Assembly (NCBI GenBank): GCA_964234715.1 | Contig: OZ174278.1 | DNA: 64,000 nucleotides | From: Podarcis melisellensis | Lineage: Eukaryota | Strand: one strand, 5' to 3' | In this document: positions 2,266-36,693 of the stretch, one piece after another | Layout of the letters: each line of letters begins with the position of its first letter | Numbering within the stretch: the stretch's first letter is position 1 | Notes under the pieces: generated by a model | What the model saw: the letters and a program-made list of their open reading frames with translations, nothing else | Told to the model about the DNA's origin: nothing | The model's database searches: none | Position numbers and translations under genes: made by a program

Positions 2266-2276
2266 AATGCTTTACT

Positions 2277-2311
2277 GTTTGTTTGTTTGTTTGTTTGTTT
2301 GTTTGTTTGTT
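2277..2311. repeat. (GTTT)n microsatellite
   Basis: Tandem GTTT, directly visible. Confidence 0.95.
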
Positions 2312-2378
2312 GGTGGGAAACAAGCAAATTCTCCTTCACAAAATCTCATCCTGGGATTCTGTTTTTCTTGCCTTAAAG

Positions 2379-9269: not shown

Positions 9270-9740
9270 AAAATGATTAAGGGGCCGGATGGAGCAAAGA
9301 GCAGCTCCTCTTTGCAGAATGGTTACAAAGTTTGGGCTTTTTAGATTAGAAAATATTAAAGCAATGTATAAAATCAGGCACTATCTGGAAATCCATTCGC
9401 ATAATTATAGAATCTGATATTATCCAATGGTTCCAGATGCTGGAAGATTCAGGACAAGACCCAAGGAAGTACATCATTGCATAGCACGTAATTAAGCTAT
9501 GGACATAGCGATGCCACCAACTAGGATGACTTTAACAGGGGATTAGACAAATTCGTGGACTATATACTGCATCCGGTATCAAAAGCAGTATGCCTCTAAA
9601 ATACCAGTTACTGAGGAACACCAGCAGGCGAGTGCTATTGTACGTATGTGCTGCTGGTGGGCTTCTCATAGGTCATTTTAGGAAGACAACACTAGGCTGA
9701 ACGGGCGTCTAGTCTGATCCTACTGGATTCTTCTTCTGTC
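9270..9740 (+). mobile_element. Decayed CR1 LINE 3' fragment
   Basis: CR1-like 3' motifs (ggaagattcaggac..., ggattagacaaattcgtgg, tctgatcc...ttcttcttct), similar to the other CR1 copies in the window. Confidence 0.65.
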
Positions 9741-19339: not shown

Positions 19340-19520
19340 AATGGGAAAACCCAATGAAAGTGATGAGTGGGGTGCTGTGGGGTTCTCTCCTGGGCCCATC
19401 ATTGTTCAACATCTTTATAAATGACTTGGACAAACGAATTGAGATGCTCATCAAATTTACAGATGACTCCAACCAGGGAGGAGTAGCTAATGCCACAGAA
19501 GACAGAATTGGGATTCAACA
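19340..19520 (+). mobile_element. CR1 LINE reverse-transcriptase fragment
   Basis: Degenerate SGV..GSLLGP.LFNIFINDLD...LIKFTDDS (RT FADD-type motif). Confidence 0.7.
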
Positions 19521-19922
19521 TTAAATTTATTTATTTATTTATTTATTTAATAAAATAAATAAAACATCAGCATGAGAAGGACATAAATATCCAACGGGAG
19601 ATTAACAGATTAAAGGCACCCTCCTAAGACTAAAGAGGAAGAAAACTATTTTGAGAAGGAGTTTTACAATCTCTACAGCAGCACGTTAATGGAAGAGTGA
19701 AATATATTTCCCTTACATTTTTTCATATATTGTTTAATAATACACAAGCATAAGAATGCAATAGCAAGAAGCAGAGCAATAGCCCCACTTTTGCAAGATG
19801 TGCAGTATGTCTGAAATACGTTTTGTATCTTTTAATATCTGTGGGTTTGTTTTGTTCATTTTTACTCTTTCTTGTTAGGGTTCGCAAAGAGCCATCAGAG
19901 TTGATGGGATCTGACGGTTACA

Positions 19923-20601
19923 ATGGAGGCAACATCAAACGCAACCACAGAAAACTCTGATCTTCTGAAGGGAGCTCATCTAGAGACAGATGATTGGTTG
20001 GCTTCTCCGGGAACTATCAGTGATGCTGAAGATGAAGCTACTGCGAGGGAGAACATTCACACTGACACTGAAAAAGAACCAGTAATGAAAGAGCCACTTG
20101 TGCTGATAACAGATTGGGATCCACGGGGTTTACCTAGCCAGGAGGAAGAATCATTAAGACGCTCCCGGTATAGGTTAGGAGGCTCTGCTGATAGCATATT
20201 ATCTTTAACTTCTTCCCATTCTCTCCTACCTCTTGAATGGAAAATTTTGAGATCTAGTCAATCAGAGAGCACACTGGCACATTTTTCTGATGCCACTCTG
20301 GAAAACACAGAAGGAGGACATAAAGATTCATCAGACAATAACCAAGATGTTGTGGATGATATAATTGGAGATGAAGTTGCTTTCAAAGTATGTACTCGTA
20401 TGCTCAACCATAGTTTAGGTGCTGCTTACACTGCAGATTCCAGGACAGCCTTTCCCATAATACACAATGGATCACCCAGCCCTAAAGATGCAAACTACTC
20501 AAAGAAAACTTCAGATAGCTCACAGTGCAAACATATACTGCACCCAAGAACAGAAAAGTTTCCAGATGTTGGATTGCAAGTTAATCAAGCACATAACTCA
20601 G
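19923..20601 (+). CDS. CAP-Gly gene, coding exon 1 (acidic/Ser-rich N-terminus MEATSNATTENS...)
   Basis: Acceptor ttgttag|19879, Kozak acaATGG, 226 open codons, donor CAG|gtaact (phase 1). Confidence 0.75.
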
Positions 20602-23600
20602 GTAACTAGGACAATCATGGGTGGGTGGTGGTTGTGACCTGGCACGGTGGCTCCTTCACACACAACCCATCAACCTAGCCGCCCTGGTGCATTCTGGGGT
20701 CCCACCAGACCCAGATTTGAATTCTGAACCAATCTGCATTGGCTTGGGGGGGGGGGGACAGGGAGCAGACCTTGCTGCCATAGTCTCCACTCAGGTCTGC
20801 TCCCAGAACATTTAAGCAGGCCAGCTCATAACTTAGGTAACTAGGACAATTAACTAGGTTCTTTTAATGAATGAATGAATGAATGAATGAATGATTCAGT
20901 CATGTAATGTTCTTCACGTGTCCTTTTTCAGCAGCTGATAGAAAAGATTCAAGTTTGACTGACCAGCTTTGGACAGCTGCTGCATCAGCAAATAACTTAC
21001 ATAATATTGTCGTGTCAAATGGTTGGGAAGGCAATTCTTATCATCACAAGGTATTACAAAATATATTTTCTTTAGTGTCATATGAATTCAAATGTTACGT
21101 ATGTTTCTGGACTTTATGCGTATTAACTCCTAAACACATAAGAGTCCTGTCAAATCATGCCAAATATCCATCATAGCATCCTGTTTTCATAATGGCGAAC
21201 CAGATGCCCATGGGAAAGATGTCCCAAGAGCACTCTCCCCATGGGTGATTCCCAGCAACTGGTATTCAGAGTCAGATTGCTTCCAATTGTGGAGGAAGAA
21301 ACATCGCCATCATGGCAAGTAGCCTTTGACAGCCCCTTGTAACCTTGGTAGTGCAAGACATTCATAATAAAAAAACTGACAGCGGCAATCGGGAAAGAAG
21401 GCATAAAGTTCCTGGCATATGAAATGAAAAAACAAAAAATATCTCCCTCCAAAGAAAAACTCCAGAGAGGTGAAATTAAAAAAAAAAAAGAATATACTTC
21501 CTTTTCTTAAGATGTGTGTTTGGGAGGATCGATTGTGAACTAGTACTTTATTTGAAAATGCTAGGTTTGCCTCTAGTTTGCCTGGCCCAAATACATCTCA
21601 TATACCACAGTTTAATAAGCAATGTGTGAGGATAGTATGTTTTGGTTAATGACAATGGACGCTGTATTCAGCCTATAATTAGCAGCCCCAGCTATTGCAT
21701 GATATGGTTGATTTATACCCACCTTCTAGGTATCTGCAGATAGTTCAAGTCTTTAAAAAGAAATCCATGGAAACCCATAAAATATGGCATAAAATGAGGA
21801 AAATATTTGTAAATGTTACTATGATTGTTTATATGTGATAGTTTTGATTACATGCAGACAGGAAGGGTCACAAAAGATTTTTTTGAAGTCTGAATGGTAT
21901 ATGTAAAACTTCCAAAAAGCAGCACTGGTGATGGTAGCGGGGAGAAGGAAGAAATTCCAGGTGTTTGAACATCTTTCTACAAGCTTCAGTACTTCCTCCT
22001 TTTTTTCCATTGTTTTCTTTGCATTGGACACGCTAAACTAGGTTGCTGCAGCAGCAGCTGCTCAAGCTGTGCCTCTTGACAATAGCCTTGCCTTCTGGCC
22101 TGATGATGGTTAGATTCTCAACACAAAAGCTCTTTTCTGATGTAAATAGAGGGCAGTGACATTACACAAGGATTGTTGGGGATGCTGGATGTGGAATCAT
22201 GAAAGCCGGCCAACCAGACAAAACGGCAGAGGTAAAATGGTAAAGTGCTGTTAAATTAAGTTTTTTAAAAAATAAAATATGAATAGAGTCGTCATCAAGC
22301 ACTAAACAAAAGCTAATGCTTCATGGTAGCACATATTTAAAATAACCCTTTCTCTGTGATAAAACATTTCAGTCAATGTCTGAAGCACAAAATATATGCT
22401 CATGCTTATGTGAAGAATCCAAATCTTCCAAATCATGATTATCTGCCACTAACGTTGTTTTCTTTTTAAAGAAACTAAAGTATTGATGCAAGATTTAGGA
22501 GCTCTTGGTATAATGCAGACTTCATGGATTTTTGTCTGAATGTATATAACTGTTTGGTGTTTTCAAGATTTTGCATTTCTCTGCTCTTTTTCTCATTTTG
22601 AGCACACTTACATTGTAGCACTCTGAATTTTCCCCAATGATACTTTTATGTTGCATTTGTTTATTATGTTCACTAAGTTTTTACTGAACCCTACAACCAC
22701 TGCAGTTTCTTTATCTTCAAAAGATTAGTATATATGGATATCAGCAAACTGAGGGGTATAAAGCAAGCTTTATATGGATATAAGTGAGAAGCGTATCCTT
22801 TGTTATGGTTTTAACAATCCACAATCCACAATCCACTTGTGTTTCATTTACAGTAACATGTCGAATCACAAACTTTTTCTCAGCAGTGAAGGTACCATCT
22901 AAGTTTAAATGTATATTCTTATTCAGGTTTGTGCTGTTTATACTATAAGAAGCTTTAACCATTCATATATTTGAGATATTCAATATTCATATTCAGATGG
23001 TAAAAAAACCATGTTTTTCTTTAAGGATTGTTGGAAATAACAAGGTTGAATTTCTTAGTCTTTAGGGTGCCACAAGACAGGGCTAAACTTCTGAAGTTTG
23101 AATCTAGTATATGAACACCTGACTTGCTCCTTTGAACCATTTATGTTGCATAGATATGGCTTAGAGTTGTCATAATTTTATAATCTTTGTGGGGGGTTTG
23201 TATTGTGTTAACTATAAGCTGCTTAATGGACCTGGACCACAGAGGAGCTGAAAAGTATACTATCAATTCAGAAGTAGTAAAAATAATAATGTACAAATGC
23301 AATCTTTGTATACTGTATAAATGCACACGTTTGTTTGTTTTTCAAACAAAAGAGCTTTATTCTTAATACATGGAAAACAGCACACGTCACAATATACAGC
23401 ACCATGCAACAGTTCTCATTACACAGCACAAATTAAATTAAACACTTGAAATTTCTTCTTGACTTTCCCCCCCTTTTTTGTTAGTCAACAAAGAAAGGAA
23501 GGTCTCCTGCAATGTCAGAGTTTCTGCTGAAATCTCCAGATGAGAACAAACAGGAGTTTCATCAACCCATGAAGAATGTGCAGGCTAAACGTCAAGTACT

Positions 23601-26600
23601 GTTGAATGGACAGAGTCCACACGCAGATGGCAAACCTTACGGGAAGGTGAACGATTTGCATCTATAGTTTCTTTAATTATAAGAACATAAGAAGAGCCTG
23701 CTGGATCAGGCCAATGGCATCCTATTCTCAAAGCAGCCATCTGAATGGCTGTGGGAAAGCCCCAAACATGACTGGAGCACAAGCACCCTCTCCCATCCTG
23801 GGGCTTCCAGCAACTGGTATTCAAAAGCATTACTGCCTCCTATGGTGGAGGCAAAGCATAGCCATCATGACTTGTAGCCACTGATAGCCTTATCTGTCTA
23901 ATCCCCTTTTAAAACTATCCAGCTTCATGGCCTATTGTTTATGCACTGAGTGAAGAGGTACTTTCGTTTACCTGTCCTGAATCTTCACTGAATCCAGCTT
24001 CATTAGATCTCCATGAGTTCTAGCGTATAAGTGCGGGAGAAAGACCTCTCTCTATCCACTTTTTCCATGCCACGTGTAATTTTGTAAACATCTATCATGG
24101 CACCTCTTTCTCCCCTTTCAGGACCTTTTCCAACTTGGCAATATCCTTTTTGAGTACCAGAACTGTACAGAATATTCCAAATGTGGTCACACCACAGATC
24201 AGTAGACCAGCATTCTGATAGCAGCAGTTTTATTTTCCATTCCTTTTCTACACACACCAGGTCAACATCTTCATCAACTGAAACACTTTCACTTTGCTGT
24301 TATCCTTAGTTCTGGCATACTGTGAAATTTGAAAACGAATAGAGAATGTTCTTAAATAGGCATATGACAGCTGCAGGAGTGAAGCTACAATTAACTCACC
24401 AGCAAAACTATCCAAAAGAAGTGGGGGTACGGGAAATAAAAACTGTGTAATTCCCCATTCCTTTGCTTCCTCCCTCCATAGTATACAGTGTACTTAAAGA
24501 ACAACTGATTTAATAGATTAATGAAGCGGTTGTGTACTTGCGTGATTTGACTTCTGAACAGGGGAGTGGCAAGTCAAGTGAACTGAAATGCTTCTGAAAC
24601 AGATAATCTTGATTGTACACTAAACAGATGGCAATGGCAGGAACTCAAGAGATAAAAATAGTCCAATGAGTGAGTTGCTGCAGACTCTTAGTCAGGGCTG
24701 TAAGCACAAGTTTATAGGAGCTTATCACACAGAAACTTTAAGAACAGAACGGTAAAAAGAAAACATATAGAGGAGAGAAATCACTTTTTTGTATTAACAC
24801 TTATATGCCACCGCATAGCCAGTAATGAAAAAAAGAAAAGAAATCAGAGCAACAAAAGTCAAAGCTATTTGGATAGCTTTTGTTTATTTTTGGTGTGGTA
24901 TGCTATCTCTTAGATTCATTACTGGATAAAACCTGTGGTTTTTCCATACCCATCCATTAGTTTGTTACAAATGGATGGGTATGGAAAAACCACAGGTTTT
25001 ATCCAGTAATGAATCTAAGAGATAGCATACCACACCAAAAATAAACAAAAGCTATCCAAATAAATACTTGAACTCTCAAAATATAACAATGACGATTTTT
25101 ATAAGCATGGGAATGCCAGTATGCAAAGTAAATTTGTGGAAAAAATAAAAGCTTAATAATATCAAACATAAGATACAGGATTTTCTTCCTAAATTACAAA
25201 GAAGGCTCAGTCAAAAGTGAACATAGAGAACTTATTTCATATTCATTGATAGGATGAGGAATACTATAAGCAAGAATGTAAAAAATGCATTGTACAGTAT
25301 TCAAATATCTTGTTATTTCCTTTGTTCTTAGAGGTTGTCCCAATTTTGCTGTTGTTGCAAACTCCCAGATTTTATCAATCCAATCATTTATTGTTAGTGC
25401 CTCCACTTGTTTGCATCATTCATATATGTGTGTGTATCTCACACACAGAGATGGATATAAGTATGTGTGACTTTATATAGATATATTGTAAGACATCAAT
25501 TTAGAAAACTCAGAAGTAAGGGGAAAGCACATATTAAGAATTCAGAATTCACATATTCAGAATTACAAATAGAATGCCATATTTTTATCTTTTCCGTGTA
25601 ATAAAACATGTGTTTTTTGAAACTGGAATGTTTCAAATGAACAAACTAATGCATTTTTTTTTTTTAAGGAGATAGAATTTCTTAAAGAAGAGCTGTCAAC
25701 TTGTAGCCTGCCAAAATTTGAATGCAACTCTCCCGGAATTCTACAGCAACAGATTGGTATGAAGTCATGTAGGCTTGTTAATTTCATCATTCAACATTCA
25801 GTGCCTTTATTTTAATTTCCATTTGAATGTGTGCTAATTGGTTTTTATATGCATCAGTCCACATGATGATCCACATTTACTAATTTCTGTGAAAGTTCAA
25901 ATAGCATTTTAGAAAAACCTTGAAACCATGTTCTACTCCTTCTAAGTATTATAGGATGAGTGTTCAGGTTATCGGCACCACTACAATGCCACAACTGATT
26001 GGTTAACACTGGCTACAAACAGCCAACACTATGGCAATAAATTTAAGCATCAGCTTAATGCATTATTTCCCCCTTCCCCGCTAAAATCTCTAAATGCACT
26101 CAAGTAAACAAACTTTCCACCCCAAACCATTTCAAGCTGTACAATTTCCCCCAAAAACTTTACTCAAAGTCAAAGTCGTAGAATTGCAGAGTTGGAGGGG
26201 ACACTGAGGGTCATCTGGTTCGACCCCTGTAGTGCATGAGTCTTTTGCGCAAAGTGCGTATCCTATGCCTCTACAAATACTAGGCACCATTCAATCAAGG
26301 CTGTATTTTTATGCACACTTTTAATTCATTCTGAGAAACAAGTGTAGTCCTGGGAGGCAAGTTAAGTATTTTGAAGTCCCTTTTATTTCAGTAGGAGAGT
26401 TGCAATCCTATGCACTACTGAGAAATAAGCTCAGTGAGACTTACTCCCCAGGTAAGTGTATCTTGCATTAAAGTCTTAAGCACAATAGGCCTTAAATGTG
26501 ACTAGACGATGCATACTGAATATTTTTGCATATTGATACACAGTAAACCTTAAAAGCCAGATCACCGATCTTCAAGAAGCCAATGAGACTGCGGTCTTAG

Positions 26601-29600
26601 AGCTAGCAAAAGCAGATGAGGAGATTTCACAACTGAAGAATGAAATGGCTCAATTAAAATCTGACTATATGCAGAAGTTAGCAGACTCTAAAGAAGAAAA
26701 TCTTAATCTGAAGAAAATGGTAAGGGGTCTGAGACAATCCTTTATTATAACTTATATACTTTAATTTTAAACCTGTGTTTTTCTTTAAGTGGGATAGAAG
26801 ACAGGTAATATATATTTAATCATGTATCAAACAGTAACCAAAGCTATAATTAGTCAATGGGTGATATTCATTTGTTTTATGCCTACAACTGTGAGCTTAA
26901 ACATTCTTAGTATGCATTTGTCTCCTAAATGTTTTATAAAATAATTGCATATTTTACACATTCACTGCTAAACCATGCTGTAAAGAATGATAAACTCACT
27001 GCATGCAGAAAAAGTACCACAGAAGAGAAAGAGTTCTGGTCTTTTTACTTGCATGTTTGGTTTGTTTGTTTATTAAATTTGTTGTTCACTTACTTTGCCA
27101 CGGCAACTCTAAGCGACATGCAATATTTTATGTGACTTATAATTTATTTTTACATAGGAAATTCAAACATAAGAACCTGTCCTGCAGTCTGCATTGGCAC
27201 AGGACCAGGTAGGGTGCATTGTGCAATTTCTCTGCACATGAATATAATCCATTAGGCAAAACTTTAAGCAACCTGGGAATTACAGCAGTTCAGAAGTGAT
27301 CAGTTATGCTTTAAACAATTGATTTCTTATATGTTGATTTCTACTCTTTATTGCTTTCCTCCTTCATGATCAAGAATCAAAACACAGTTTAAACTAATTC
27401 TTCCCCCTCTAAAGATCAATAGGATGCACACCAGACATGATCCAGTAGACACTTATGAGCAGACCTTGCATGAAGAGATTTGTGAGCTAAGAGCTGAGTC
27501 CAGGAGACTGAGGGAAATCGGCCACCAGCTGAATGAGGAAAACCACAGGATGAAAGAAGAGCTATGGGATGTAAAGAGGAAATATGAATGGATCGTGCAT
27601 ACAGTTGCTGGCAAACAGGATGGTAAAGGAACCACCATTATGGTATATTGCTTGGGTTCTTACGATGATCAGTAAACAGCCCAGTATGTTGCTCCAGCAA
27701 AGACATCTCATTAACAACATTAACACCAGTTACTTTTGAGCAATGACTTTATAGCAGAGCTTCATGGCAGTAGCATAGCATGGGCAGGCACAGGGGCAGT
27801 TGTCCCAGGTGCATAATTATTAGGGGCACAAAATTTCAACACCTCAATACAGCTGCCTCAATTCACAGTTCCATCACTGGGCTCTGTTGAAAATGGCTCC
27901 TCTGTGCAAACTAGGAAGTGACCTCTGCAGACAATGGAACGACTCTTCTTGTCTTTGCAGCTGTGATCTTCTGGGCGATGCAGATGCCATTAGTCAGTTG
28001 AATGTGCATGCATACTCTGTCCGTTTCCCTCACTCCCACCCCCTCTCTGTGTGGCCCTGGGCGCTGGCAACTCATGCTACACCACTGCTCATTGAGCCCA
28101 TTCTTCTGCATGGGTTCATCATGTGTCCACTGCAATGTAACTAATACAGGAGGAAGACTGACTATAACAGGCCCCTATCCATCACTATTGTGCGCTGGCT
28201 GATGTATAAAAAATAGTTGCTACTCGCCATGCAATCAGATAGACCTGGTCCTGGGGTTTCTTAAGAGGATAAAGTGCATTTAACAGGTTTTCAATCATCA
28301 TCATCATCATCACTGAAGATATAGTGACAATGAACTTGATTTCAACCACCAACTTCAATATGAATCCTATCATGGAGAGAAAGGTCTGAGATACACATCA
28401 CCTCATCATTCTGGGTTTCCTCTGTGTTTGTGCCCAAAATGACTGTTTTCATTTTAAAAGATCTTGTCTCTAGTCATTAGGTACATCTTTATACCCTCAA
28501 CAATTATCCCAAGTATTTTATAAATTATCCGAGGCAAAGCTATAACATTAACACCAATACTACCACAGTGAAATTCACCAAAACAAATCTTTATTGGAAT
28601 TCGAAATGCCAGAAGAGGTATTTGTTGATTAACTGTAAAGGTGATTAACCCTCAACAGGTAATTAATACTGTCAGAGTTGATGGTTAGCAAAAAGAGATC
28701 CAGCACTACAGAAAAGGGACTTCAACTTTCTACTGCGGTCACAGCAATGCTGAATCATGACAAATAGCTATAAAATAGCTTTCTTAAAACTAAAAGTGCT
28801 TGAAGATCAGTGCAACTAGCAGCAGTTTGTATATTTATTTTACATTAAGTTCTTCCAATGAGTATCTAATGTTACTCATTTGATTACATTTTATTTTAAA
28901 TGTGGCATCTGTGATAAGTAAGACAATTCTGTTCCCAGCTATACTAAAGCCAAAGTGTATTTCTCACATCTTAATTTAAAATACTAATAATAAAGCAGGA
29001 AGTTGCTCTTTCAGAAGACATTCAACCAACAAACGGAAAAGACATTTCACTTTTTGAAAATACATCATTTTAATAATTAAAGCATCAGTGCTTAATAAAA
29101 AAATAGTTTAGTTTTAATAGACTGCATCAACAGTGATTTAAAAAGATTGACTGAGTGAAATATTATTGCTTTATAATATATAAAACATCTAAGCAGAATT
29201 TGATAATAAGCAAGGCTTTTATTTTTATCTAGAAAAGTTACAAGAACATTCTAGGAAAAATGCTTCTTCCCCATCATCCATAAATAGTGAATCTACAGAA
29301 TTTCTGATTTCTGGATACTGTGACACAGGGCTAGCAAAAGAAAACAGAGACTTAAAAGGTATGGTAATTAAAATATGCAATTGCACATCTTCTCATTTTG
29401 CCTTGTTAGCACAGAAAAGAATAAAAAAGTATACTGCATGTTCCCATGAATCTTCATATGGAAAGAAAAATCACTTAATTGGTTTTCTGTTTTCAGCTTT
29501 CTTTTTATGCAGTCAGTGAAAAGTAAGATCTATTTGGCTGCTTAGAGTTGTGAAATACTTCCTCCAAACATTCCTTGCTTTGGATATTATTCATTATTCT

Positions 29601-29911
29601 TTATGGCCTTTCCACACAAAACATGCCAGATTTCAGTGGACCCAGAATATAGGAAAAATTCTGAGCTTGGGTGTTATTGATTTTAGTAATGCATCTGCAT
29701 GCTTTATTGGATTGGGATAAATTAAGAACCTCAAAAGTGTAGACTCCCTGCATTCGTCCAATATGGGGGAAAGGAACATTGGTCAACATACTGTTTTCAG
29801 TACTGGCAAAACAGCCACAAAATGTGATGGCTATGTAAGGATTTTACATTATCATAAAGGCATTCAGACAGACAACTGAAGAAAAGACTAACCTTGGAGC
29901 TGGGAGTCCAA

Positions 29912-29958
<47 letters not shown>

Positions 29959-32900
29959 GAATTAGAATTAGAATTTATATACTGCCATATACCTGCAGGA
30001 ATATAAAACCATAAAGTACATAATCAAAATAAAACAACAACCCAGTAACACACACACACACCATATTTGTAAAAGGGCATAGGATGTCAATCAAATGAAC
30101 CAAAGGCCTGGTTAAAGAGGAATGTTTTTGCCTGGCGCCTAAAGTTGTATAATGAAGGCACCAGGCAAACTTCGCTGGGGAGAGCATTTCACAGATGGGA
30201 AGCCACTGCAGAGAAGGCCCGTTCTTGTGTTGCCACCCTCTGGACCTGTTGTGGAGGAGGCACATGAAGAAGGGCCTCAGAAGATTATCTCAGGGTTATC
30301 TTATCTGACCATTCTTATCTTATCTATTCTTATCTGACCAATAGATTTAACTATTATTTTCATCCTTGGAGTTGTCACAATATATCTGTAGTGGTATATC
30401 TTATTATTTGAATGAATGTGCTTTTGGCAACTCCATATCATTTTTCCAAGAGCACAGAAATAACCAGGAAAGTCAAACCTTTAGCCCCGGGGAGTTTATC
30501 AGGGCCTTCAAGAATCCCCAATACGTCCAATGACATCTCCAGGGCTATGACTAGCCAATGACTGAGGCCACATCAGTGTCTCTCCCCTTGTCCCCTTTCA
30601 AATTAGCGATATGGTTCAAGAAGTGTGGCAAGTAAAGAGATGTTTGATCAAACTGAGTGCACTGGAGCAGGCTATGCAAATTACAGTGTTCTAGCATTTT
30701 TTAAAAAAACAACAACAACCAAACAAACCATGGATTGATGCACTTTAATGGTTTCCAGGATAAATATCTAGAATTTTACAACTTAAGTATCTGAGGTGAG
30801 ATAAGGTTTTTTAGTTTTTTGCACACAAAATTATAGAATATTCCCTGAGCATCTGTTGGTAGGGAACTGGTTCCACATTACCTATTTGAGTTGGGCATCC
30901 TTGAACAAAACCTTGCAACTAGATTTGACCCAAATTTTCGAGCAGCTTTTTAATGTTTTTTTAATCGTATTTCGTAAACCTTTTATTGGCATCACATACA
31001 ACATCCAAAACAAATCAATGCAGAATTACCACTTCCCCAGTGGCACAAACATTTGCTAAAAGAAAGGAGGCAGAGCAGTCTATCGTCACATCTCTTGGTC
31101 TCCAGGGAGATCAGACATCTGCAGTGTAATTTTTTTTTTTTAAATCAAGATGATGCATCTGAAGAGGTAACAGAGGCGAGCAGCAGCAACTTCCCTTGCA
31201 TTACTCAACACAATCAAACAAGTCATGAGAACTATGATCAAAACATCTCAAGTTCATCTTCGAGTGGTGTCTCTCAAGTGGACACTTGCAATAAATATTA
31301 TCCAAACAGGTAAGAATTGAATGGACATGAATATGATTGTGTTGTAAATGTAGTTTTCTGCTGTAAAGAAAAAGGTTGAGACCCCACACTGTGTAGTACT
31401 GCCAACTTAATGAATGCAAAGAGGTCAAGTAACTCTTCAGCAACAGTCTAGCTAAAGCAGGAAAGCACAGAAACATGTCTGCTGGGCTTGAGCTCATCAT
31501 AAGATCAAGGACTGACTTTCCCCTTTGCTTGATTGTGTATAGATGTCAGCCAGCACATTAGATGAGATCAATCATGATCTTCTGTGCACTCCAAGATGCG
31601 ACAGCTAGGATTGTTTCAATTTATGGCTATAAAGCTAGGCTCACTTCAGAAAGGTAGGGCTGTGAGAACTATGTGGAACTGAATGAGTGGCAGGTGTTGC
31701 ATTGACAACTGTGGGTACACTGATTGCCACAGCAAAACCACTGAATAGGAGGGGAAGCAGTAGCATAGGGGGTCCCTTAATGCTAAGTAAGCCAAAACCA
31801 AGATAGGCACTAAAACATACCTAAATCTCAATCCAAGCCTACTGCATGATGGTTTTAACATTACAAATGACAGGAAAAGATCACCACCAAATATTCTCTT
31901 TAGCACAGGGGAGGGGGACCCCTAACCCTTCAGGACTCTCCCTAGGTCACACACCTCACCAGCCCTACTCCACGCCCTCTGAGTAATTCTGCTGGAGTGG
32001 AATGTGCCCTTGAGTTGTGCTAATGCCCCTTGCTTGCCTGCTTGGTGCAATAGAGAGGGGCCTGTGCATGCAGAAGCCTTTGGCTTTGTGTGTTTGGAAT
32101 GTGTCACATTTTATAAAGCATTGTTTCCATTGCTGCACCCACTTTTGCCTTTGGACCTAACACCATGTGAATGCAGGCTTTGAAAAGTTGGCCACGAGGG
32201 AATATGGCCCTTTATTTCTGCAATTTCCACATGAAAAAGACAAAGCTATGTACAGTGAAAATCTATTTCATTTCTATCCCAGCCTTCATTAAACCTGGTG
32301 ATCCTATGGCAAAACCACAGAATAAAAACATTTTAAAACAATATTCTATTTCTGTCCAATATTCTATGTCTGACCAGGACCCTTCCATGGCCCACATACA
32401 GCAGGTAGCATTTTAGATCTCTGCCTCCTCCTTTACCTTTCTTATCTGTCCTGCAGTGTTGTTAAAAAGACCTTCTATAATGCTATTAAAGAGAGGCATG
32501 GACAAACCTAAATCCAAATCTTCCACAAATACTGCAGTGATTCCCTAATCCTTTACAAGGATAATAATGAATTCCTTGCTTTCCTAGAGACAAATGAAGT
32601 AGCTTGTCCTCAGTCTCTTTCATTTATCATTACCGTTTAAAACACAGAGTAAGTTTTGCCAAGAAAGGAGTTTGATTTTGTTAAAATGTGTACAGCAGCT
32701 ACCACTGGTTGAAGGTGAAAGAACCTGCTGCATAAAAGATTTTTCTTGCAACTTCCCTGTAACATCAGAGCTGTGGCTTACATCAGAATAGCAGGGCTGT
32801 GTCTTGTTTCTTCTGCAGTCCAAATAGCAGCCAGCTGTCCCCTAATTTTGTGCATGAAAATTCCCACATATTGTTAGAATAAAGAATTTGAATAGATGTT

Positions 32901-35900
32901 ATTGTTACCCCCCACACAAAAAAAATATCACGGCTCTTTTACTTAAGTTGCAATGAGAATGCAGTGTTAGAGTGCATATAAGTTCAAGGAAAACCACTGT
33001 TTTTATCAGGTACCTGTAAGGGCCAAAGTAGACATGATGTGAGAGATCTGTGATCACATCTCAGGTATTTTTATACACTTTAAAGCAGCAGTGTGGGTCC
33101 ACAAATTGTACAAGAACCACAGCACTATGGGAGAGGAGTGTAACCATTTTCTTGCATGTCATTTCACCGATATAAATACCATCCAGTGAAGCTGTGAAGA
33201 AGAGGAGAGAAAAATATGGGCACCCATATTGTACCCATCTTTCCCCCCCATGGGCATTTCTCCTATTTAAATATTTATAGAACTGTGATTATCCCCAGAA
33301 TGGGAAGAAGATGGGAACAATATAGGTGTCAATCCTTGCCCTTCCTACAAATTAACATTAGCTTGGGGGTAGGGGGGCCTGACTGAAGGAAATGGAATTG
33401 TGAGGGTAAACACTCAGCAACATGGCCCAATCCAATTTTGTTTCTTCAAAAAGTTGTTGGGAAATTCGGTCCCAAGTTTCCCCTGTCATGTCTAGTTTGT
33501 TCATAAGATATGTAGGATTCTTTGGTTATCACGAAGAGTCTGAATAATAAAGTTGTGCTGGAGTACCAAAAAAAAAAAAAAAAAAGGACTCTTACGTCTT
33601 TCAAAGGAAAGCTATTGATTTTCTACAACTTTTTATCCCAGGATTCATCTAGATAAGGCGGCACTATCAAGACGACCATTTGCACCCAGGAATGTTACAG
33701 ACTTGAAAGTTGGAAACCTAGTGAAATTTTCATGCCCAGCAGGAAAAATCAGCAAGGGAACTGTTAAGTATTTGGGACCACTTTTGGGGAGAGAAGAAGA
33801 CTACCTTGGAATAGAGCTGGAAGGGGATCAAATAGGAAGGCATGATGGAACTTTTCAAGGAACACGCTACTTTCTTTGGTAAAGTTTACTCTTCTATCTA
33901 GCAATAGTATATTTGAGATCTTCCCTTCCCACCCCGAACCCAATTTTCCCCAGGGGCAGAAATAAAGCAATTTCACAGTTTTCTTGTTCAACATTTTACC
34001 TTTACCATGCATAATATGCAACCACTAATGGATCACAAATGTGTGTTGGCAAGTTTGTGGTTTTGAAGTATTGCACAAAATACAACATTACAAAAGCTAT
34101 ACTACTCAATTGAATATATTACTGGTGAAGACAGGGTTCATGGCATGCTCCTTACAATTAGGATAGTAACTAACAATAGCAGTAAGTTCACTTTTTATTG
34201 ATGAGAGCTTCAGGATTTAGCTACTGTCTGCAGCAAATTGTGTTAAGCATTGATATCAGTGTAAACGCAAGTACCTTGCATCCTCCCATCTGTAAAAACT
34301 GGTGTGCAAGAGATGGAAAAAGCCAAGTATGTGGGAAATCCTGTGTCACCATCTCATCAAGACTAGAATTTCACATATATTTTTTTGCACTTTATCAAAC
34401 AGTAACCATGCCTTGTACTCCTAATTTGGAGTGATGGCAAATTAATATGCTGTTATCAAACATTTAAAAAGCATTATTCTCACAGAGCTTTGTAAATGCA
34501 CCATTTGCAACTTAAAACATGTGTAAATGCTTTACACCATCAACTACAAGGTATTAAATGTTTCCCTCCCATAATTGTGAGAGTTTTGGAATTCCCTCCC
34601 TACAGAGGTGTCTGGCACCTTCATTATGCATTATTACATATTTCTAGAACCCACTCTCTTTGTGATTGTAATTCACTTTAAACTGTTTGTATCTCATCCT
34701 GTGTCTGTCTGGTGAAGTGGGTAATAAATAAATAAATAAATAAAAGTTTTACTGGTGCTATTAAGCATTGCAATGGATGTAGGAGAAAAATCCTGAAAAT
34801 GTGATGTTTTCCTGGCACTCTATATATGCCTGTTTCTGCCCACTTTCTGCCTCCAATCAATTATTTTATATCTATGTATTATAAATGTCTGAGAGCTTCC
34901 TTTATATAATGGACATTATGAAAATTCTAAAGAAGAAATTGCTTTGTGCATCACTAGAGAGAAAAGCTTGCACTCAGAAATTCTATAGTTCAAAGTAGCT
35001 CTATAAACACGAGGTGTGTGCATGAGCCCAAGATTCACCTTATATTTGTGCATATATATATATATTATATGAAGACAGAAGTGCCTGGCCCGCTCTGGTC
35101 CTTGGGGTCACGAAGAGTCGGACACGACTAAACGACTATATATATATATATATATATTCTTTCCACTTCAGTCTGTGCTTTGGGTTCAGAGGCACTTTGT
35201 ATAAAACAAATTCATTCTCATGGTAAATCTAAAAATTACTTTTCCTTCTTTTTGGCAGAAGTTGCTGAAATTTGCAAGTGCATGAACCCTCTCGTTTTTC
35301 TTCAGACTGCATAAATGTTTGCAGAACTCCTCCAGACTAGATTAAGCCTGCCAGTGGCTTCTGTGGGGGATGTAAAATGAACTCACATTCTCCATAATCA
35401 GTATTAGGGCAATGCATTTGCTAGGCCAACTAAAACTCCAAAATCCATATTAGTTTAATATTTTCAAGTTCAGGGAAGCATGGTGGCTTGCGCCTTGCTT
35501 TTTCATAACTTAAAATAATTAAGAAGTAGCTGAGTTGTGTGTATTCTTGCTTGTGCATTTTTCAAAACATTAGCTTCACATGAGCTGGCTTTGCTTTCCT
35601 GGAGTCTCTCCCAGAGTTTGTGGGGACAAAACTAGTACGTAAAAAACGAGTGCTTTTAAATTGCTGGAAACGTCAGAGTTTTGTGTGACTGGAACAGTGC
35701 ATGTATCGCCTATTAACTACAACCTATAACAGGAATAGCCAAAATAGTGCTTTCCAGATGTTGCTAAGCTACAACTCTCAGCATCCCTGCTGAGCTGTAG
35801 TCCAGCACCTAGAGGGCACCATATTGGCCATCTCTAGCAATTTGTATCTCCATTCCAAGTCTGAACCATGCTGTGCTCTTCAAAATTTTAATACTAGCTT

Positions 35901-36517
35901 TACTGCCTGAGCAATGGCTGTAACTTCAGTGCAGGGAGCGTTTATCCCCTCAAATAACCCTGATATCTACTTTCAGCAATGCCTTATCATTTCTTGACCC
36001 TTTCCTCAATTTATTTTTTCCTGTCTCTACTAGTGCTACAGTATACATCTCCACTATTGTATCTCCCAGAGTATACGTGATAAAGTGGTGAAATAGAAAC
36101 TATCCTCAACAGCAAAGATATTCCATCCTATGGGCGGGGGGGGGGGAGAGAGAGAGAGAGAGGGAGAGACTAAAGTCACAATTAAAAGATAGTGCTGGTC
36201 CTGGTAAAGGGTTTCCCACTAACAGAAAATTGTGCATTTTCCCCCTGTCATGCAAAAATGTCTTTGTTGTCTTTAAATTGTGGCCTTTAAGAATCCAAAC
36301 AGAAAACACTGTCCAGCAGCAGATTTCTGTTTGCATGACCATCGAAGTAACTTGAGTAAATTGAGTTTGTAACTCTTGTTGGTTAGTTAACTTTATGTCA
36401 TAAAAAGTCATGTCAAAGAACCATATCCACATTACTGACTTTCAAAATTTGTTTTCCAGTGCCCCTAAAAAAGGAGTTTTTGTTAACTTCAGCAAAATCA
36501 TTATTGCCTGGGAATAA
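19923..36517 (+). CDS. Uncharacterised coiled-coil protein with a C-terminal CAP-Gly domain (10 coding exons, about 670 aa)
   Basis: join(19923..20601,20932..21050,23485..23646,25669..25756,26544..26719,27415..27622,29233..29358,31150..31309,33642..33878,36460..36517). All introns are GT-AG and all phases are compatible; 2013 nt, open to TAA. The C-terminus is a recognisable CAP-Gly domain. Confidence 0.8.
20616..20826. mobile_element. 211-bp insertion flanked by a 24-bp direct repeat that includes the splice donor
   Basis: cataactcaggtaactaggacaat (20592-20615) versus cataacttaggtaactaggacaat (20827-20850). Confidence 0.7.
20866..20893. repeat. (GAAT)n microsatellite
   Basis: Directly visible. 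Confidence 0.9.
20932..21050 (+). CDS. CAP-Gly gene, coding exon 2 (AADRKDSSLTDQLW...YHHK)
   Basis: Acceptor ctttttcag|cag (NAGNAG), donor AAG|gtatta; phase 1->0. Confidence 0.75.
21136..21335 (-). mobile_element. CR1 LINE 3' tail fragment
   Basis: acataagag...ccagcaactggtattcaga...catcgccatcatggcaagtagcc, similar to the copy at 23.7 kb. Confidence 0.6.
22042..22231 (+). pseudogene. Candidate disabled (pseudo)exon of the CAP-Gly gene
   Basis: Polypyrimidine tract, then ctag|GTT GCT GCA... reading VAAAAAAQAVPLDNSLAFWPDDG*, and donor GAG|gtaaaa. 190 nt with stops in all three frames. Confidence 0.4.
23485..23646 (+). CDS. CAP-Gly gene, coding exon 3 (STKKGRSPAMSEF...KPYGK)
   Basis: Acceptor cccttttttgttag|, 54 open codons, donor AAG|gtgaac; phase 0->0. 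Confidence 0.7.
23679..24270 (-). mobile_element. CR1 LINE 3' fragment
   Basis: ataagaacataagaag tail; minus-strand MIDVYKITRGMEKVDRERSFS is a remnant of the CR1 ORF2 C-terminus. Confidence 0.85.
24866..25062. repeat. Perfect inverted repeat: 93-bp arms with an 11-nt spacer
   Basis: 24866-24958 is the exact reverse complement of 24970-25062. Confidence 0.95.
25669..25756 (+). CDS. CAP-Gly gene, coding exon 4 (EIEFLKEELS...ILQQQI)
   Basis: Branch-point-like ctaat, T-tract, aag|; donor G|gtatga; phase 0->1. Confidence 0.75.
26544..26719 (+). CDS. CAP-Gly gene, coding exon 5 (coiled coil NLKSQITDLQEANETAVLELAKADEEISQLKNEMAQLK...)
   Basis: Acceptor cacag|, heptad-like sequence, donor ATG|gtaagg; phase 1->0. 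Confidence 0.85.
27415..27622 (+). CDS. CAP-Gly gene, coding exon 6 (coiled coil ...LHEEICELRAESRRLREIGHQLNEENHRMKEELWDVKRKYE...)
   Basis: Acceptor ccccctctaaag|, donor GATG|gtaaag; phase 0->1 matches the next exon. Confidence 0.85.
29233..29358 (+). CDS. CAP-Gly gene, coding exon 7 (EKLQEHSRKNASSPSS...ENRDLK)
   Basis: Acceptor ttttatctag|, donor AAG|gtatgg; phase 1->1. Confidence 0.75.
29911..29975. repeat. (ATT)n microsatellite followed by (AGAATT)3
   Basis: Directly visible; abuts the tail of an L2-type element. Confidence 0.9.
29973..30295 (-). mobile_element. L2/CR1-group LINE 3' fragment
   Basis: aaggcctggttaaagaggaatgtttttgcctggcgcc...gggagagcatttcacagatgggaagccactgcagagaaggccc; minus-strand remnant WLPICEMLSP. 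Confidence 0.65.
31150..31309 (+). CDS. CAP-Gly gene, coding exon 8 (Ser-rich linker DDASEEVTEASSS...YYPNR)
   Basis: T-tract then atcaag|, donor AG|gtaaga; phase 1->2. Confidence 0.75.
33642..33878 (+). CDS. CAP-Gly gene, coding exon 9 (most of the CAP-Gly domain)
   Basis: RRPFAPRNVTDLKVGNLVKFSCPAGKISKGTVKYLGPLLGREEDYLGIELEGDQIGRHDGTFQGTRYFL; acceptor tttatcccag|, donor TG|gtaaag; phase 2->2. Confidence 0.92.
35071..35137 (+). mobile_element. Very short Bov-B 3' end inserted in a (TA)n tract
   Basis: gaagacagaagtgcctggcccgctctggtccttggggtcacgaagagtcggacacgactaaacgac, flanked by TA repeats. Confidence 0.8.
35729..35837. mobile_element. Degenerate palindromic hAT-type MITE
   Basis: tccagatgttgctaagctacaactc ... 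gagctgtagtccagcacctaga, similar to the MITEs at 37.5 and 46.9 kb. Confidence 0.55.
36460..36517 (+). CDS. CAP-Gly gene, last coding exon (CAPKKGVFVNFSKIIIAWE*)
   Basis: Branch point ctgac, acceptor gttttccag|; completes the CAP-Gly YFxC...GVFV motif; TAA at 36515-36517. Confidence 0.9.
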
Positions 36518-36687
36518 CGATTCCACTACATCCTGAACAATGAATGCATGGACTTTAAAGCCTTCCAATATATTGTGCTTCTGCTGCAAAGAAGAAACAA
36601 AGTGTTTAGAACTCTGTTCATCAGTGTATTTCTTCCATTTTTATCAAGTTGTATTTGAGCATTTTATAGTATTGTATTTTTTTGTAA

Positions 36688-36693
36688 AATAAA
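36688..36693 (+). terminator. Poly(A) signal of the CAP-Gly gene
   Basis: First AATAAA about 170 nt after the stop, preceded by a U-rich upstream element. Confidence 0.65.

What the first reader, a model, noticed from the sequence alone, without database searches (positions are those of the whole stretch)
19879..36693. Unnamed, apparently intact coiled-coil + C-terminal CAP-Gly gene immediately downstream of TAB3
Seen: ten GT-AG exons splice in phase into one 670-aa ORF, with an acidic/Ser-rich N-terminus, a coiled coil of roughly 150 aa (exons 4-7), a Ser-rich linker and one CAP-Gly domain that ends a few residues before the stop. Established: CAP-Gly domains bind EEY/F tails of alpha-tubulin and EB proteins. 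The vertebrate members I know (CLIP1-4, DCTN1, CEP350, KIF13B, CYLD, TBCB, TBCE) have other architectures: N-terminal or multiple CAP-Gly, or kinesin, Ubl, LRR, ankyrin or USP partner domains. None of those partners is visible here. Inference: this is an additional, uncharacterised microtubule/centrosome-linker family. From memory, human has no such gene between GK and TAB3, so it may have been lost in mammals.
Basis: partly seen in the sequence, partly recalled or inferred. Interest (0 to 1): 0.88.

Follow-up and report, generated by a model that had tools for sequence, protein, structure and literature searches.

The report
Unnamed ancient coiled-coil CAP-Gly gene
This is a real, expressed lizard gene for a coiled-coil protein ending in a CAP-Gly domain, from an old animal gene family that has no name or literature and was not found in any mammal, bird or teleost protein set searched.

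Summary
Observation confirmed. Ten GT-AG exons (19923-36517, + strand) join in phase into a 670-codon ORF with a good start context, a stop at 36515-36517 and AATAAA at 36688-36693. Spliced RNA contigs from a close relative join exons 1-2-3-4.

The product is 96% identical to RefSeq 'uncharacterized protein LOC114596189' of Podarcis muralis, so the window is from a lacertid lizard. Predicted architecture: about 290 disordered residues, a parallel dimeric coiled coil of about 140 residues, a Ser-rich linker, and a CAP-Gly domain that ends the protein.

Orthologues, all unnamed or wrongly auto-named, occur in lizards, turtles, frogs, caecilians, coelacanth, non-teleost ray-finned fishes, sharks, chimaera and lamprey. 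Coiled coil plus CAP-Gly also match in tunicates, echinoderms, molluscs, a brachiopod and rotifers. GK(+) - this gene(+) - TAB3(-) is conserved in gar. No mammal, bird, crocodilian, snake or teleost hit was seen. dN/dS against Lacerta agilis is 0.46 overall and 0.16 in the CAP-Gly.

The family is not CLIP, DCTN1, CYLD, CEP350, TBCB or KIF13B. Its motif is GK/R-H-D/N-G with an invariant His, a change reported as compatible with EEY/F-tail binding. The likeliest function, inferred only, is a dimeric reader of tubulin or EB tails. Public gene models exist, so the novelty is an undescribed family, not an unannotated gene.

The parts
19879..19922 (+). 5' untranslated start of the first coding exon. 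An acceptor AG lies at 19877-19878 and an in-frame stop at 19902-19904.
   Evidence: Sequence. RNA contigs X1 record 1 and X5 record 5 begin to match at 19878 and carry 272 and 28 further 5' letters that lie elsewhere, so at least one upstream non-coding exon exists.
19923..20601 (+). Exon 1 coding part, residues 1-226. It is acidic and Ser-rich, predicted disordered, and holds the conserved vertebrate motif VDDIIGDE.
   Evidence: ORF and donor CAG|gtaact. 56% identical to Varanus LOC123029112. RNA contigs cover it. Conservation block shown. pLDDT is about 30 in the orthologue model.
20932..21050 (+). Exon 2 (119 nt, phase 1 to 0)
   Evidence: tblastn with the Varanus and Anolis orthologues. 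Splice sites. RNA joint 21050>23485 seen in runs X1 and X5.
23485..23646 (+). Exon 3 (162 nt)
   Evidence: tblastn. RNA contig pieces 23483-23629 joined on to exon 4.
25669..25756 (+). Exon 4 (88 nt). It ends in the conserved ILQQQI just before the coiled coil.
   Evidence: tblastn. RNA contig piece 25666-25757. The same exon boundary is present in gar, chimaera and lamprey.
26544..26719 (+). Exon 5, first long coiled-coil helix (conserved LQEANE..AVLELAKADEEISQLK)
   Evidence: 68% identical to Anolis and 71% to a frog. Helix 343-417 with pLDDT up to 94. The coiled-coil HMM also hits invertebrate members.
27415..27622 (+). Exon 6, second long coiled-coil helix (conserved LNEENHRLKEELWD)
   Evidence: 80% identical to Anolis. 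Helix 423-483. Predicted parallel in-register homodimer.
29233..29358 (+). Exon 7, linker with the conserved Ser-rich acidic motif (SP.S..SESTE.L..GY)
   Evidence: tblastn. Invariant S491, S497, T500 and L503 in 23 vertebrates. The motif HMM hits a tunicate and two unnamed metagenome proteins (P0034, P0216) whose source organism was not established.
31150..31309 (+). Exon 8, Ser-rich linker (phase 1 to 2)
   Evidence: tblastn. Splice sites and phase.
33642..33878 (+). Exon 9: the family-specific RRPFAPR extension and most of the CAP-Gly domain, including GRHDG
   Evidence: PF01302 at E=2.1e-11. 81% identical to Anolis sagrei. Invariant residues listed. dN/dS 0.16 for exons 9-10.
36460..36517 (+). 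Exon 10: the last two strands of the CAP-Gly (C.PKKGVFVNFSKIIIAWE) and the stop TAA at 36515-36517
   Evidence: Sequence. tblastn. The same intron position and the same end (..MAWE) are found from lamprey to lizards.
36518..36693 (+). 3' UTR up to the polyadenylation signal AATAAA (36688-36693)
   Evidence: Sequence only. The RNA 3' end was not tested.

Best explanation
This is an intact, transcribed, selectively constrained protein-coding gene. It is the lacertid orthologue of RefSeq 'uncharacterized protein LOC114596189' of Podarcis muralis. It belongs to an old, unnamed bilaterian family defined by a conserved two-helix coiled coil, a Ser-rich linker and a CAP-Gly domain that ends the polypeptide. 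The binding-loop motif is GK/R-H-D/N-G with an invariant His. Shown here: the gene model, its splicing for exons 1-4, orthology, synteny, the CAP-Gly fold and constraint. Supported by prediction only: the coiled coil forms a parallel in-register homodimer, so the molecule would carry two C-terminal CAP-Gly domains on flexible linkers behind a roughly 290-residue disordered N-terminal region that holds a short conserved acidic motif. Inferred from what CAP-Gly domains do: the paired domains bind acidic-aromatic C-terminal tails (EEY/F of tyrosinated alpha-tubulin, EB1/EB3 or CLIP-170). The protein would then act as a bivalent microtubule, plus-end or centrosome linker, and its N-terminal region would recruit an unknown cargo or partner.
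For: Gene model: ten GT-AG exons give 670 codons. RNA: spliced contigs from two studies join exons 1-2-3-4; X24 raw RNA reads on exon 1 have the first mate on the minus strand, which in most stranded libraries means + strand RNA (the library type is not on record). Orthology: 96.1% identity to P. muralis and 93.1% to L. agilis, falling to 22.6% for lamprey, colinear over the whole length. All ten exons are intact in L. agilis. Intron positions are shared with gar, chimaera and lamprey. Synteny: GK(+) - gene(+) - CUE/TAB3(-) in gar, GK - gene in Callorhinchus, gene - TAB3 in L. agilis; fused GK models in Polypterus and Acipenser. Constraint: dN/dS 0.46 overall and 0.16 in the CAP-Gly; exons are 93-98% identical against 88-94% for introns. 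Domain: PF01302 at 60 bits in the orthologue; AF2 pLDDT 88.5; the 45 best Foldseek PDB matches are all CAP-Gly domains. The last 100 residues are 46-83% identical from rotifers to lizards, and the hallmark Gly, Y, F, C and the His are invariant or nearly so. The vertebrate coiled-coil HMM hits the invertebrate members (Lingula 1.5e-30, crinoid 1.3e-26, bivalves about 1e-23). Dimer: ipSAE 0.46 against 0.00 for the best of 3 controls. The mark was reached by 21 of 30 proteins solved as pairs of one chain and 0 of 23 solved as single chains (microbes). On eukaryotes it was reached by 17 of 29, but by only 1 of the 7 without an older solved relative. The runs agree in at least 96% of contacts and the partner pLDDT is at least 77. 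Contacts run i to i with 3-4 spacing. Ligand: PMC3806363 states that the Asn of GKNDG bonds the EE[Y/F] tail and that its occasional replacement by His is conservative.
Against: No binding, localisation or tissue data exist. The position matching Trp in p150Glued (GKWVGV) is Tyr here, and the Phe of ATLF has no aromatic counterpart (alignment), so the groove is not identical to those of proven EEY/F binders. For the lizard exon alone the best PDB sequence match is CYLD CAP-Gly3, which binds ubiquitin rather than tubulin tails. No conserved SxIP motif was found. dN/dS of 0.7-0.8 in exons 2-4 and 7-8 rests on few changes and shows weak constraint outside the coiled coil and CAP-Gly. Junctions of exons 5-10 rest on phase, homology and RefSeq models, not on reads I laid. 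The dimer result is a prediction, and coiled coils may score from memory.
Confidence: 0.7

Rival explanations
1. The CAP-Gly here is not a tubulin or EB tail reader. It would bind another ligand, such as ubiquitin or a Pro-rich peptide as CYLD CAP-Gly3 does, and the protein would be a signalling scaffold, perhaps functionally tied to its conserved neighbour TAB3.
For: The best single-sequence PDB match of the lizard exon is CYLD CAP-Gly3 (E=2.7e-5). It is 38-40% identical in the structural alignment to CYLD CAP-Gly3 bound to ubiquitin (7owc, 7owd). The canonical Asn is never present. The gene has sat next to TAB3 since at least the bony-vertebrate ancestor.
Against: With the family profile, CYLD (42 bits) is no closer than DCTN1 (47), CLIP-115 (41.6) or CLIPR-59 (41.5). 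The family keeps G-K/R-H-D/N-G, whereas the aligned CYLD loop reads GCTDG. Asn to His is described as conservative for tail binding. Conserved neighbourhood in vertebrates is not evidence of shared function. The invertebrate members predate that synteny (synteny in invertebrates was not tested).
Confidence: 0.15
2. It is a short paralogue or fragment of CEP350, as some automatic names say (centrosome-associated protein 350 or 350-like in a caecilian, sharks and snails).
For: RefSeq names of P0173, P0237, P0250, P0264 and P0271. CEP350 also has a single CAP-Gly in its C-terminal part (my knowledge).
Against: The CEP350 CAP-Gly (2coz) scores 39.3 bits with the family profile, below DCTN1, CYLD, CLIP-115 and CLIPR-59, and ranks 26th by Foldseek at 22% identity. 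Members are 460-2100 residues long, and the domain always ends the protein. The family has its own conserved coiled coil, intron positions and GK-TAB3 locus. Most entries are simply 'uncharacterized'.
Confidence: 0.05
3. It is not an independent functional gene. It would be either a decaying relic, or 3' alternative exons of GK that make a GK-CAP-Gly fusion protein.
For: Fused GK+CAP-Gly models exist in Polypterus and Acipenser, and a Podarcis raffonei product is filed as 'glycerol kinase isoform X5'. The first coding exon is spliced to an upstream exon that I could not place.
Against: An in-frame stop at 19902-19904 lies between the acceptor and the ATG, so no upstream ORF can read in. The P. 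raffonei product starts at this gene's own Met and holds no GK residue. Separate gene calls are made in gar, chimaera and L. agilis. The ORF is intact in more than 60 species from lamprey to lizards, and dN/dS is 0.16 in the domain.
Confidence: 0.03

Closest known systems
Dynactin subunit 1 (p150Glued) CAP-Gly
   Same: It is the highest-scoring solved relative of the family profile (47.3 bits, E=1.6e-11), with the same fold. Both have one CAP-Gly next to a dimeric coiled coil. The G-K-x-D-G loop, the RYF.C motif and the G.F strand are shared.
   Different: In p150 the CAP-Gly is N-terminal; here it ends the protein. There is no dynactin p150 domain (Pfam). The loop has His instead of Asn, and Tyr stands where p150 has Trp.
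CLIP-170 / CLIP-115
   Same: The working model is the same: a parallel coiled-coil dimer presenting CAP-Gly domains that read EEY/F tails. The fold matches.
   Different: CLIPs carry two N-terminal CAP-Gly domains with Ser-rich regions, and CLIP-170 has C-terminal zinc knuckles and its own ETF tail. Here there is one C-terminal domain, no zinc knuckle, and the tail ends in AWE.
Tubulin-folding cofactor B (TBCB; C. elegans F53F4.3)
   Same: It is the best Foldseek match (1lpl, E=3e-5, TM 0.69/0.73). Both have a coiled coil followed by a CAP-Gly at the C-terminal end of the protein.
   Different: TBCB is about 240 residues long with an N-terminal ubiquitin-like domain and a short acidic tail after the CAP-Gly. 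No Ubl domain is present here, and the protein stops 1-4 residues after the last strand.
CYLD, third CAP-Gly domain
   Same: It is the best single-sequence PDB match of the lizard exon. It is 38-40% identical in structure-based alignment and shares the stretch DGTF.GTRYF.C.
   Different: There is no USP domain and only one CAP-Gly. The CYLD loop is GCTDG, whereas here it is GK/RHDG. With the family profile CYLD is not closer than other families.
CEP350 (CAP350)
   Same: It has a single CAP-Gly towards the C-terminus of a coiled-coil-rich protein, and it is the automatic name given to some members.
   Different: Its CAP-Gly scores lower than four other families. CEP350 is about 3100 residues long, and the domain is followed by several hundred more residues (my knowledge, not tested here).

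Membership tests
CAP-Gly domain superfamily (Pfam PF01302) | Sequence match above the curated Pfam threshold | tested here: met
   Exon 9 alone scores 44 bits, E=2.1e-11, against a cut-off of 26.5. The 96%-identical orthologue P0198 scores 60.3 bits. 23 of 23 vertebrate members match.
CAP-Gly domain superfamily (Pfam PF01302) | CAP-Gly beta-sheet fold | tested here: met
   AF2 model of the last 100 residues of P0198 with a 20-sequence alignment has pLDDT 88.5. The 45 best Foldseek PDB matches are all CAP-Gly domains, at TM about 0.6-0.7. The window's own two-exon domain was not folded, because the join has no reference.
CAP-Gly domain superfamily (Pfam PF01302) | GKNDG tail-binding loop | tested here: inconclusive
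   The loop is GRHDG in the window and GK/R-H-D/N-G in most of the family; three of the 20 aligned members (lamprey and the two rotifers) replace the first Gly, reading NRHDG, TKHDG and SKHDG. The His is invariant in all 20 sequences from rotifers to lizards. PMC3806363 calls Asn to His a conservative change. No binding test was possible.
CLIP family (CLIP1-4) | N-terminal, tandem CAP-Gly domains (plus ankyrin repeats in CLIP3/4, zinc knuckles in CLIP1) | tested here: not met
   A single CAP-Gly occupies the last ~90 residues, and Pfam finds no other domain.
DCTN1 (p150Glued) | N-terminal CAP-Gly plus dynactin p150 region | tested here: not met
   Only PF01302 is found, and it is C-terminal.
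CYLD | Three CAP-Gly domains followed by a USP deubiquitinase domain | tested here: not met
   One CAP-Gly and no USP hit.
TBCB | N-terminal ubiquitin-like domain, short coiled coil, C-terminal CAP-Gly, about 240 residues | tested here: not met
   No Ubl hit. The N-terminal 290 residues are predicted disordered. The protein is 670 residues long.
CEP350 | CAP-Gly closest to that of CEP350, in a very long protein where the domain is internal | tested here: not met
   2coz scores 39.3 bits, below DCTN1, CYLD, CLIP-115 and CLIPR-59. The domain always ends the protein.
KIF13B / TBCE | Kinesin motor, or LRR plus Ubl partner domains | tested here: not met
   No such Pfam hit in any member scanned.
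Unnamed 'GK-TAB3 locus' CAP-Gly family (RefSeq LOC114596189 and orthologues) | Colinear full-length similarity, shared intron positions, terminal ..VFVNFSK(V/I)I(M/I)AWE end, and the GK - gene - TAB3 locus | tested here: met
   96.1% identity to P. muralis and colinear down to lamprey. Intron positions shared. The end is conserved. TAB3 is convergent in the window, as in L. agilis and gar. GK itself is not inside the window.

The most novel reading that the evidence does not exclude
This is a twelfth, bilaterian-wide CAP-Gly protein family that has escaped study. It was not found in any of the usual models (mouse, human, chicken, zebrafish, fly, worm) but it is present in Xenopus. It would be a bivalent reader of tyrosinated tubulin or EB tails with an invariant His in the binding loop, which may give a ligand or pH specificity unlike that of GKNDG domains. 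Its repeated loss would then mark a cytoskeletal function that several lineages gave up independently.
Probability: 0.4. Interest if true: 0.6.

Novelty: new member of a known kind. Interest (0 to 1): 0.5.

Why it matters
CAP-Gly proteins are a small, well-studied set: CLIPs, p150Glued, CYLD, CEP350, KIF13B, TBCB and TBCE. They link microtubule ends, motors and signalling, and several are disease genes. A further family is conserved in sequence, intron positions and (in jawed vertebrates) chromosomal place for some 500 million years, by the accepted age of the lamprey split, which I did not compute. That means the catalogue drawn from human and mouse is incomplete. Absence from mammals, birds and teleosts, if confirmed at genome level, would explain why the family has no literature. 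Its presence in Xenopus laevis (LOC108708387) makes it directly testable. It also gives a clean case for asking what cell-biological function can be lost repeatedly. In addition, annotation pipelines currently give its members misleading names (CEP350-like, myosin-11-like, golgin-like, glycerol kinase isoform).

Tried and rejected
1. A simple splice-site weight matrix found only some exons and proposed a false exon at 26395-26451. Homology showed that exon 4 joins exon 5 directly.

2. My first idea was a CYLD-like paralogue, because CYLD CAP-Gly3 was the best PDB hit of the lizard exon. I dropped it when the family profile scored DCTN1, CYLD, CLIP-115, CLIPR-59 and CEP350 alike and no USP domain was found.

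3. A homologue search with exon 1 alone gave one hit (Varanus) because of the tool's length window.

4. Paper searches for 'CYLD-like' with CAP-Gly, for GKHDG, for six LOC identifiers and for a CAP-Gly census found nothing on this family.

5. GK exons were sought in the window using the fused GK models. None was found, so GK lies beyond the window.

6. The look-up of encoding contigs found no record for P. muralis isoform X3. L. agilis was used instead.

7. There is no conserved SxIP (EB-binding) motif. The vertebrate N-terminal motif has no match in the invertebrate members.

8. Pfam finds nothing consistent outside the CAP-Gly, only weak generic coiled-coil hits.

9. Earlier-findings look-ups gave only a sibling note on the same window.

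10. Joined step left out: the spliced 670-residue model has no reference, so it was never sent to a search, fold or complex tool. It was joined only inside local scripts, for frame, alignment and dN/dS. Exons were searched one by one by reference, and the 96%-identical RefSeq orthologue P0198 stood in for Pfam, folding and the dimer test.
Full report
**What is in the sequence.**
Stop-free segments on the + strand between 19.9 and 36.7 kb, read with their splice sites, give ten exons:
- 19923-20601
- 20932-21050
- 23485-23646
- 25669-25756
- 26544-26719
- 27415-27622
- 29233-29358
- 31150-31309
- 33642-33878
- 36460-36517

All nine introns are GT..AG. The phases fit, and the join is 2013 nt, that is 670 codons plus TAA, with no internal stop.

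The first coding exon begins at an acceptor just before 19879. It carries an in-frame stop at 19902-19904 and then ATG at 19923 in a good context. AATAAA lies at 36688-36693.

Exon 9 alone hits Pfam CAP_GLY (E=2.1e-11). The domain runs across the last intron (..RYFL|C..) and the protein ends one residue after the last strand.

**A note on method.**
The joined protein has no reference, so I never sent it to a search, folding or complex tool. Exons were searched singly by reference. The join was made only inside local scripts, for frame, alignment and dN/dS. The RefSeq orthologue P0198, which is 96% identical, stood in wherever a full-length protein was needed.

**It is transcribed and spliced.**
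Logan contigs of two runs from different studies, from a close relative of the source animal (about 97-98% identical), were laid on 19850-25800.
- Run X1 holds one 1535-nt contig matching 19878-20580, 20928-21048, 23483-23629 and 25666-25757.
- That contig therefore joins exons 1-2-3-4.
- It also carries 175 further letters at its 3' end. Exon 5 is 176 nt long.
- It carries 272 letters at its 5' end that lie elsewhere.
- Run X5 shows the exon 1-2 and exon 2-3 joints.

The joint 21050>23485 is reported as GT..AG. The other two joints are blurred only by local divergence at the exon ends. One of these, by my reading of the eight letters reported between the two sides of the exon 1-2 joint, is an in-frame 9-nt difference at the end of exon 1.

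Raw stranded RNA reads from another run (X24) cover exon 1 thinly, with the first mate on the minus strand. In most stranded libraries this means + strand RNA; the library type is not on record.

At least one non-coding exon lies upstream and was not located. Junctions 5 to 10 were not tested with reads, because only one call of 6 kb was allowed. They rest on phase, homology and the colinear RefSeq models.

**What it is orthologous to.**
Three searches gave a consistent set of relatives:
- the CAP-Gly exon searched without a length limit;
- a full-length turtle member;
- the C-terminal region of the coelacanth member.

Names were looked up. The members found are:
- Lizards: Podarcis, Lacerta, Rhineura, Pogona, Anolis, Sceloporus, Phrynosoma, Hemicordylus, Tiliqua, Varanus.
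- Many turtles.
- Frogs, including Xenopus laevis LOC108708387.
- Caecilians.
- Coelacanth.
- Non-teleost ray-finned fishes: bichirs, sturgeons, paddlefish, gar, bowfin.
- Cartilaginous fishes: sharks, rays, chimaera.
- Lampreys.
- At about 50-57% identity in the domain: a tunicate, a crinoid, gastropods, bivalves, a brachiopod and bdelloid rotifers.

Almost all are 'uncharacterized protein LOC...' or 'CAP-Gly domain-containing protein'. A few carry automatic names that contradict one another: CEP350(-like), myosin-11-like, golgin-like, serine-rich adhesin-like, glycerol kinase isoform X5.

The window's product is:
- 96.1% identical to Podarcis muralis LOC114596189;
- 93.1% identical to Lacerta agilis;
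- 60-75% identical to other lizards;
- about 48% identical to turtles;
- 38% identical to frogs;
- 35% identical to coelacanth;
- about 30% identical to sharks;
- 23% identical to lamprey.

All alignments are colinear. The window therefore comes from a lacertid lizard.

I found no paper on the family.

**Orthology is backed by gene structure and place.**
- Gar, chimaera and lamprey share the large first coding exon.
- They share the boundary ..LQ.QI | .DLKS.. before the coiled coil.
- They share the intron inside the CAP-Gly after RYF..
- In spotted gar the order is GK (FGGY domains, +), this gene (+), then a CUE-domain gene, that is TAB3 (-).
- In Callorhinchus, GK (+) precedes the gene.
- In Lacerta agilis the CUE gene follows it, convergent, about 6 kb away.
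- In the window the large TAB3 exon is on the minus strand at 51262-52743.
- GK exons are not inside the window.
- Fused GK+CAP-Gly models in Polypterus and Acipenser point to the same adjacency.
- The Podarcis raffonei 'glycerol kinase isoform X5' holds no GK residue. It is this gene with exon 9 skipped in frame.

**Constraint.**
All ten exons are intact in L. agilis. Nei-Gojobori dN/dS against it is:
- 0.46 overall;
- 0.44 for exon 1;
- 0.54 for the coiled coil;
- 0.7-0.8 for exons 2-4 and 7-8, on few changes;
- 0.16 for the CAP-Gly exons.

Exons are 93-98% identical, against 88-94% for introns.

Across 23 vertebrates the conserved blocks are:
- VDDIIGDE (residues 147-154);
- two coiled-coil blocks (346-389 and 429-465);
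- a Ser-rich acidic motif (about 491-503);
- residues 581-671, the CAP-Gly with a family-specific RRPFAPR extension.

**Architecture.**
Pfam finds only CAP_GLY in all members scanned.

The full-length AlphaFold2 model of the orthologue shows:
- residues 1-290 with no confident structure (pLDDT about 30);
- short helices at 293-331;
- two long helices at 343-417 and 423-483 (pLDDT up to 94);
- an unstructured linker at 486-585;
- the CAP-Gly at the end.

Folded alone with a 20-species alignment, the last 100 residues reach pLDDT 88.5. Their 45 best PDB matches are all CAP-Gly domains. The top matches are the C. elegans TBCB-like protein F53F4.3, CYLD CAP-Gly3, mouse TBCB and p150Glued.

Two copies of residues 340-480 are predicted to form a parallel, in-register dimer:
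- The ipSAE score is 0.46, against 0.00 for the best of 3 controls.
- The mark was reached by 21 of 30 proteins solved as pairs of one chain and by 0 of 23 solved as single chains. Those counts are for microbes.
- On eukaryotes it was reached by 17 of 29, but by only 1 of the 7 with no older solved relative. A pass may therefore come from memory.
- The runs agree in at least 96% of contacts, and the partner pLDDT is at least 77.
- This supports dimerisation but does not show it.

A vertebrate coiled-coil HMM also hits the invertebrate members at the expected place:
- Lingula 1.5e-30;
- crinoid 1.3e-26;
- bivalves about 1e-23.

The family is therefore defined by coiled coil plus CAP-Gly, not by the domain alone. 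The vertebrate N-terminal motif is not found in invertebrates.

**Relation to known CAP-Gly proteins.**
A profile of the family's last 100 residues scores all solved CAP-Gly domains in one band:
- DCTN1 47 bits;
- CYLD 42 bits;
- CLIP-115 and CLIPR-59 about 41.5 bits;
- CEP350 39 bits;
- CLIP-170 39 bits;
- TBCB 38 bits;
- KIF13B 36 bits;
- TBCE 34 bits;
- CLIP4 30 bits.

Members of the family score 100-134 bits with the lizard exon and are 46-83% identical to each other from rotifers to lizards. No partner domain of any named family is present. It is therefore a separate family inside the CAP-Gly superfamily.

Its marks are:
- a domain that ends the polypeptide, which stops 1-4 residues after a conserved aromatic residue (Trp in 19 of the 20 sequences aligned, Tyr in Lingula); the ending is ..MAWE in all vertebrates except one frog;
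- a preceding RPFAPRS..D segment that packs on the domain in the model;
- a binding loop of the form G-K/R-H-D/N-G whose His is invariant.

**Likely function.**
The following is inferred.

CAP-Gly domains bind C-terminal EE[Y/F] tails of alpha-tubulin, EB proteins and CLIP-170 through a groove flanked by the GKNDG loop. The Asn bonds the tail, and its occasional replacement by His is described as conservative (PMC3806363).

The hallmark glycines, the Tyr/Phe of RYF, the Cys and the G.F strand are all kept. The most likely mechanism is therefore a homodimer that presents two tail-binding domains on flexible linkers. It would bind tyrosinated microtubules, growing ends through EB proteins, or centrosomal microtubule anchors. 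The disordered N-terminal region would then bring in an unknown partner.

Points against this mechanism:
- Two aromatic groove positions of p150Glued are not matched exactly.
- The lizard exon alone resembles CYLD CAP-Gly3, a ubiquitin binder.
- There is no conserved SxIP motif.
- No experiment exists.

**Distribution.**
No mammal, bird, crocodilian, snake, salamander, teleost, insect or nematode protein appeared among:
- the 24 hits;
- the 67 hits;
- the 30 of the 150 best representatives whose names I looked up, including 20 of the 21 single-domain hits with E below 5e-24.

Lamprey and molluscs are still found at 54-57% identity. An annotated mammalian orthologue would therefore have been seen.

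It rests on protein sets only, with length windows of 433-1379 and 481-1530 residues in two of the searches. No genome of those groups was examined.

**Verdict.**

Gene models of this family already exist in public annotation, so the gene is not undiscovered. As a family, though, it is unnamed and unstudied, sometimes misnamed, and apparently missing from the main model organisms.

It is a new member of a known kind (coiled-coil CAP-Gly linkers) with a distinctive C-terminal, His-type domain. Interest is moderate.

Noticed in passing
window 51262-52743 (-): A 493-codon Pro/Ser/Gln-rich ORF on the minus strand is the large exon of TAB3. Pfam finds no domain in this exon. The CUE-domain gene sits in the same convergent position in Lacerta agilis (L001 36289-40312) and gar (L002 29258-32551).
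   Followed up: partly
window 23680-23840 (intron 3): A short stretch reaches word depths of 657 (X1) and 1180 (X5) in the contig runs and about 30-40 in the raw RNA runs. It has dozens of different loose ends and internal joints, and links to 21175-21270. It looks like a high-copy, transcribed interspersed repeat (SINE-like), not part of the gene.
   Followed up: no
window 24866-24961 and 24967-25062 (intron 3): A 96-nt inverted repeat, 99% complementary, with only 5 nt between the arms. It could be a MITE-like hairpin or an assembly palindrome.
   Followed up: no
window 19354-19521 (+): A reverse-transcriptase fragment (weak RVT_1 hit, E=0.007, motif ..LFNIFINDL..) lies about 350 nt upstream of the first coding exon. 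It is a decayed LINE copy.
   Followed up: partly
window 6001-10000: G+C rises to 0.43-0.48 against about 0.38 elsewhere. This could be a CpG island or promoter, and a candidate site for the unplaced 5' non-coding exon (272 nt in RNA contig X1 record 1).
   Followed up: no
P0207 (Podarcis raffonei), mapped to window exons 1-8 and 10: A RefSeq product filed as 'glycerol kinase isoform X5' is this gene with exon 9 (237 nt, in frame) skipped, so it lacks most of the CAP-Gly domain. It is either a real CAP-Gly-less isoform or a model artefact. The gene is merged with GK in that annotation.
   Followed up: partly
P0159 (Mauremys mutica isoform X2), C-terminus: This turtle isoform replaces the last exon by a 60-residue unrelated tail after ..RYYLC, which would remove the last two strands of the CAP-Gly. 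Other turtle isoforms end normally in ..MAWE.
   Followed up: no
L004 (Lampetra fluviatilis) 1-4274 and 31546-36395: In lamprey the upstream neighbour is a Hikeshi-like gene, not GK. The downstream convergent gene (739 residues) has no Pfam hit on record. The GK - gene - TAB3 order may therefore be a jawed-vertebrate feature.
   Followed up: no
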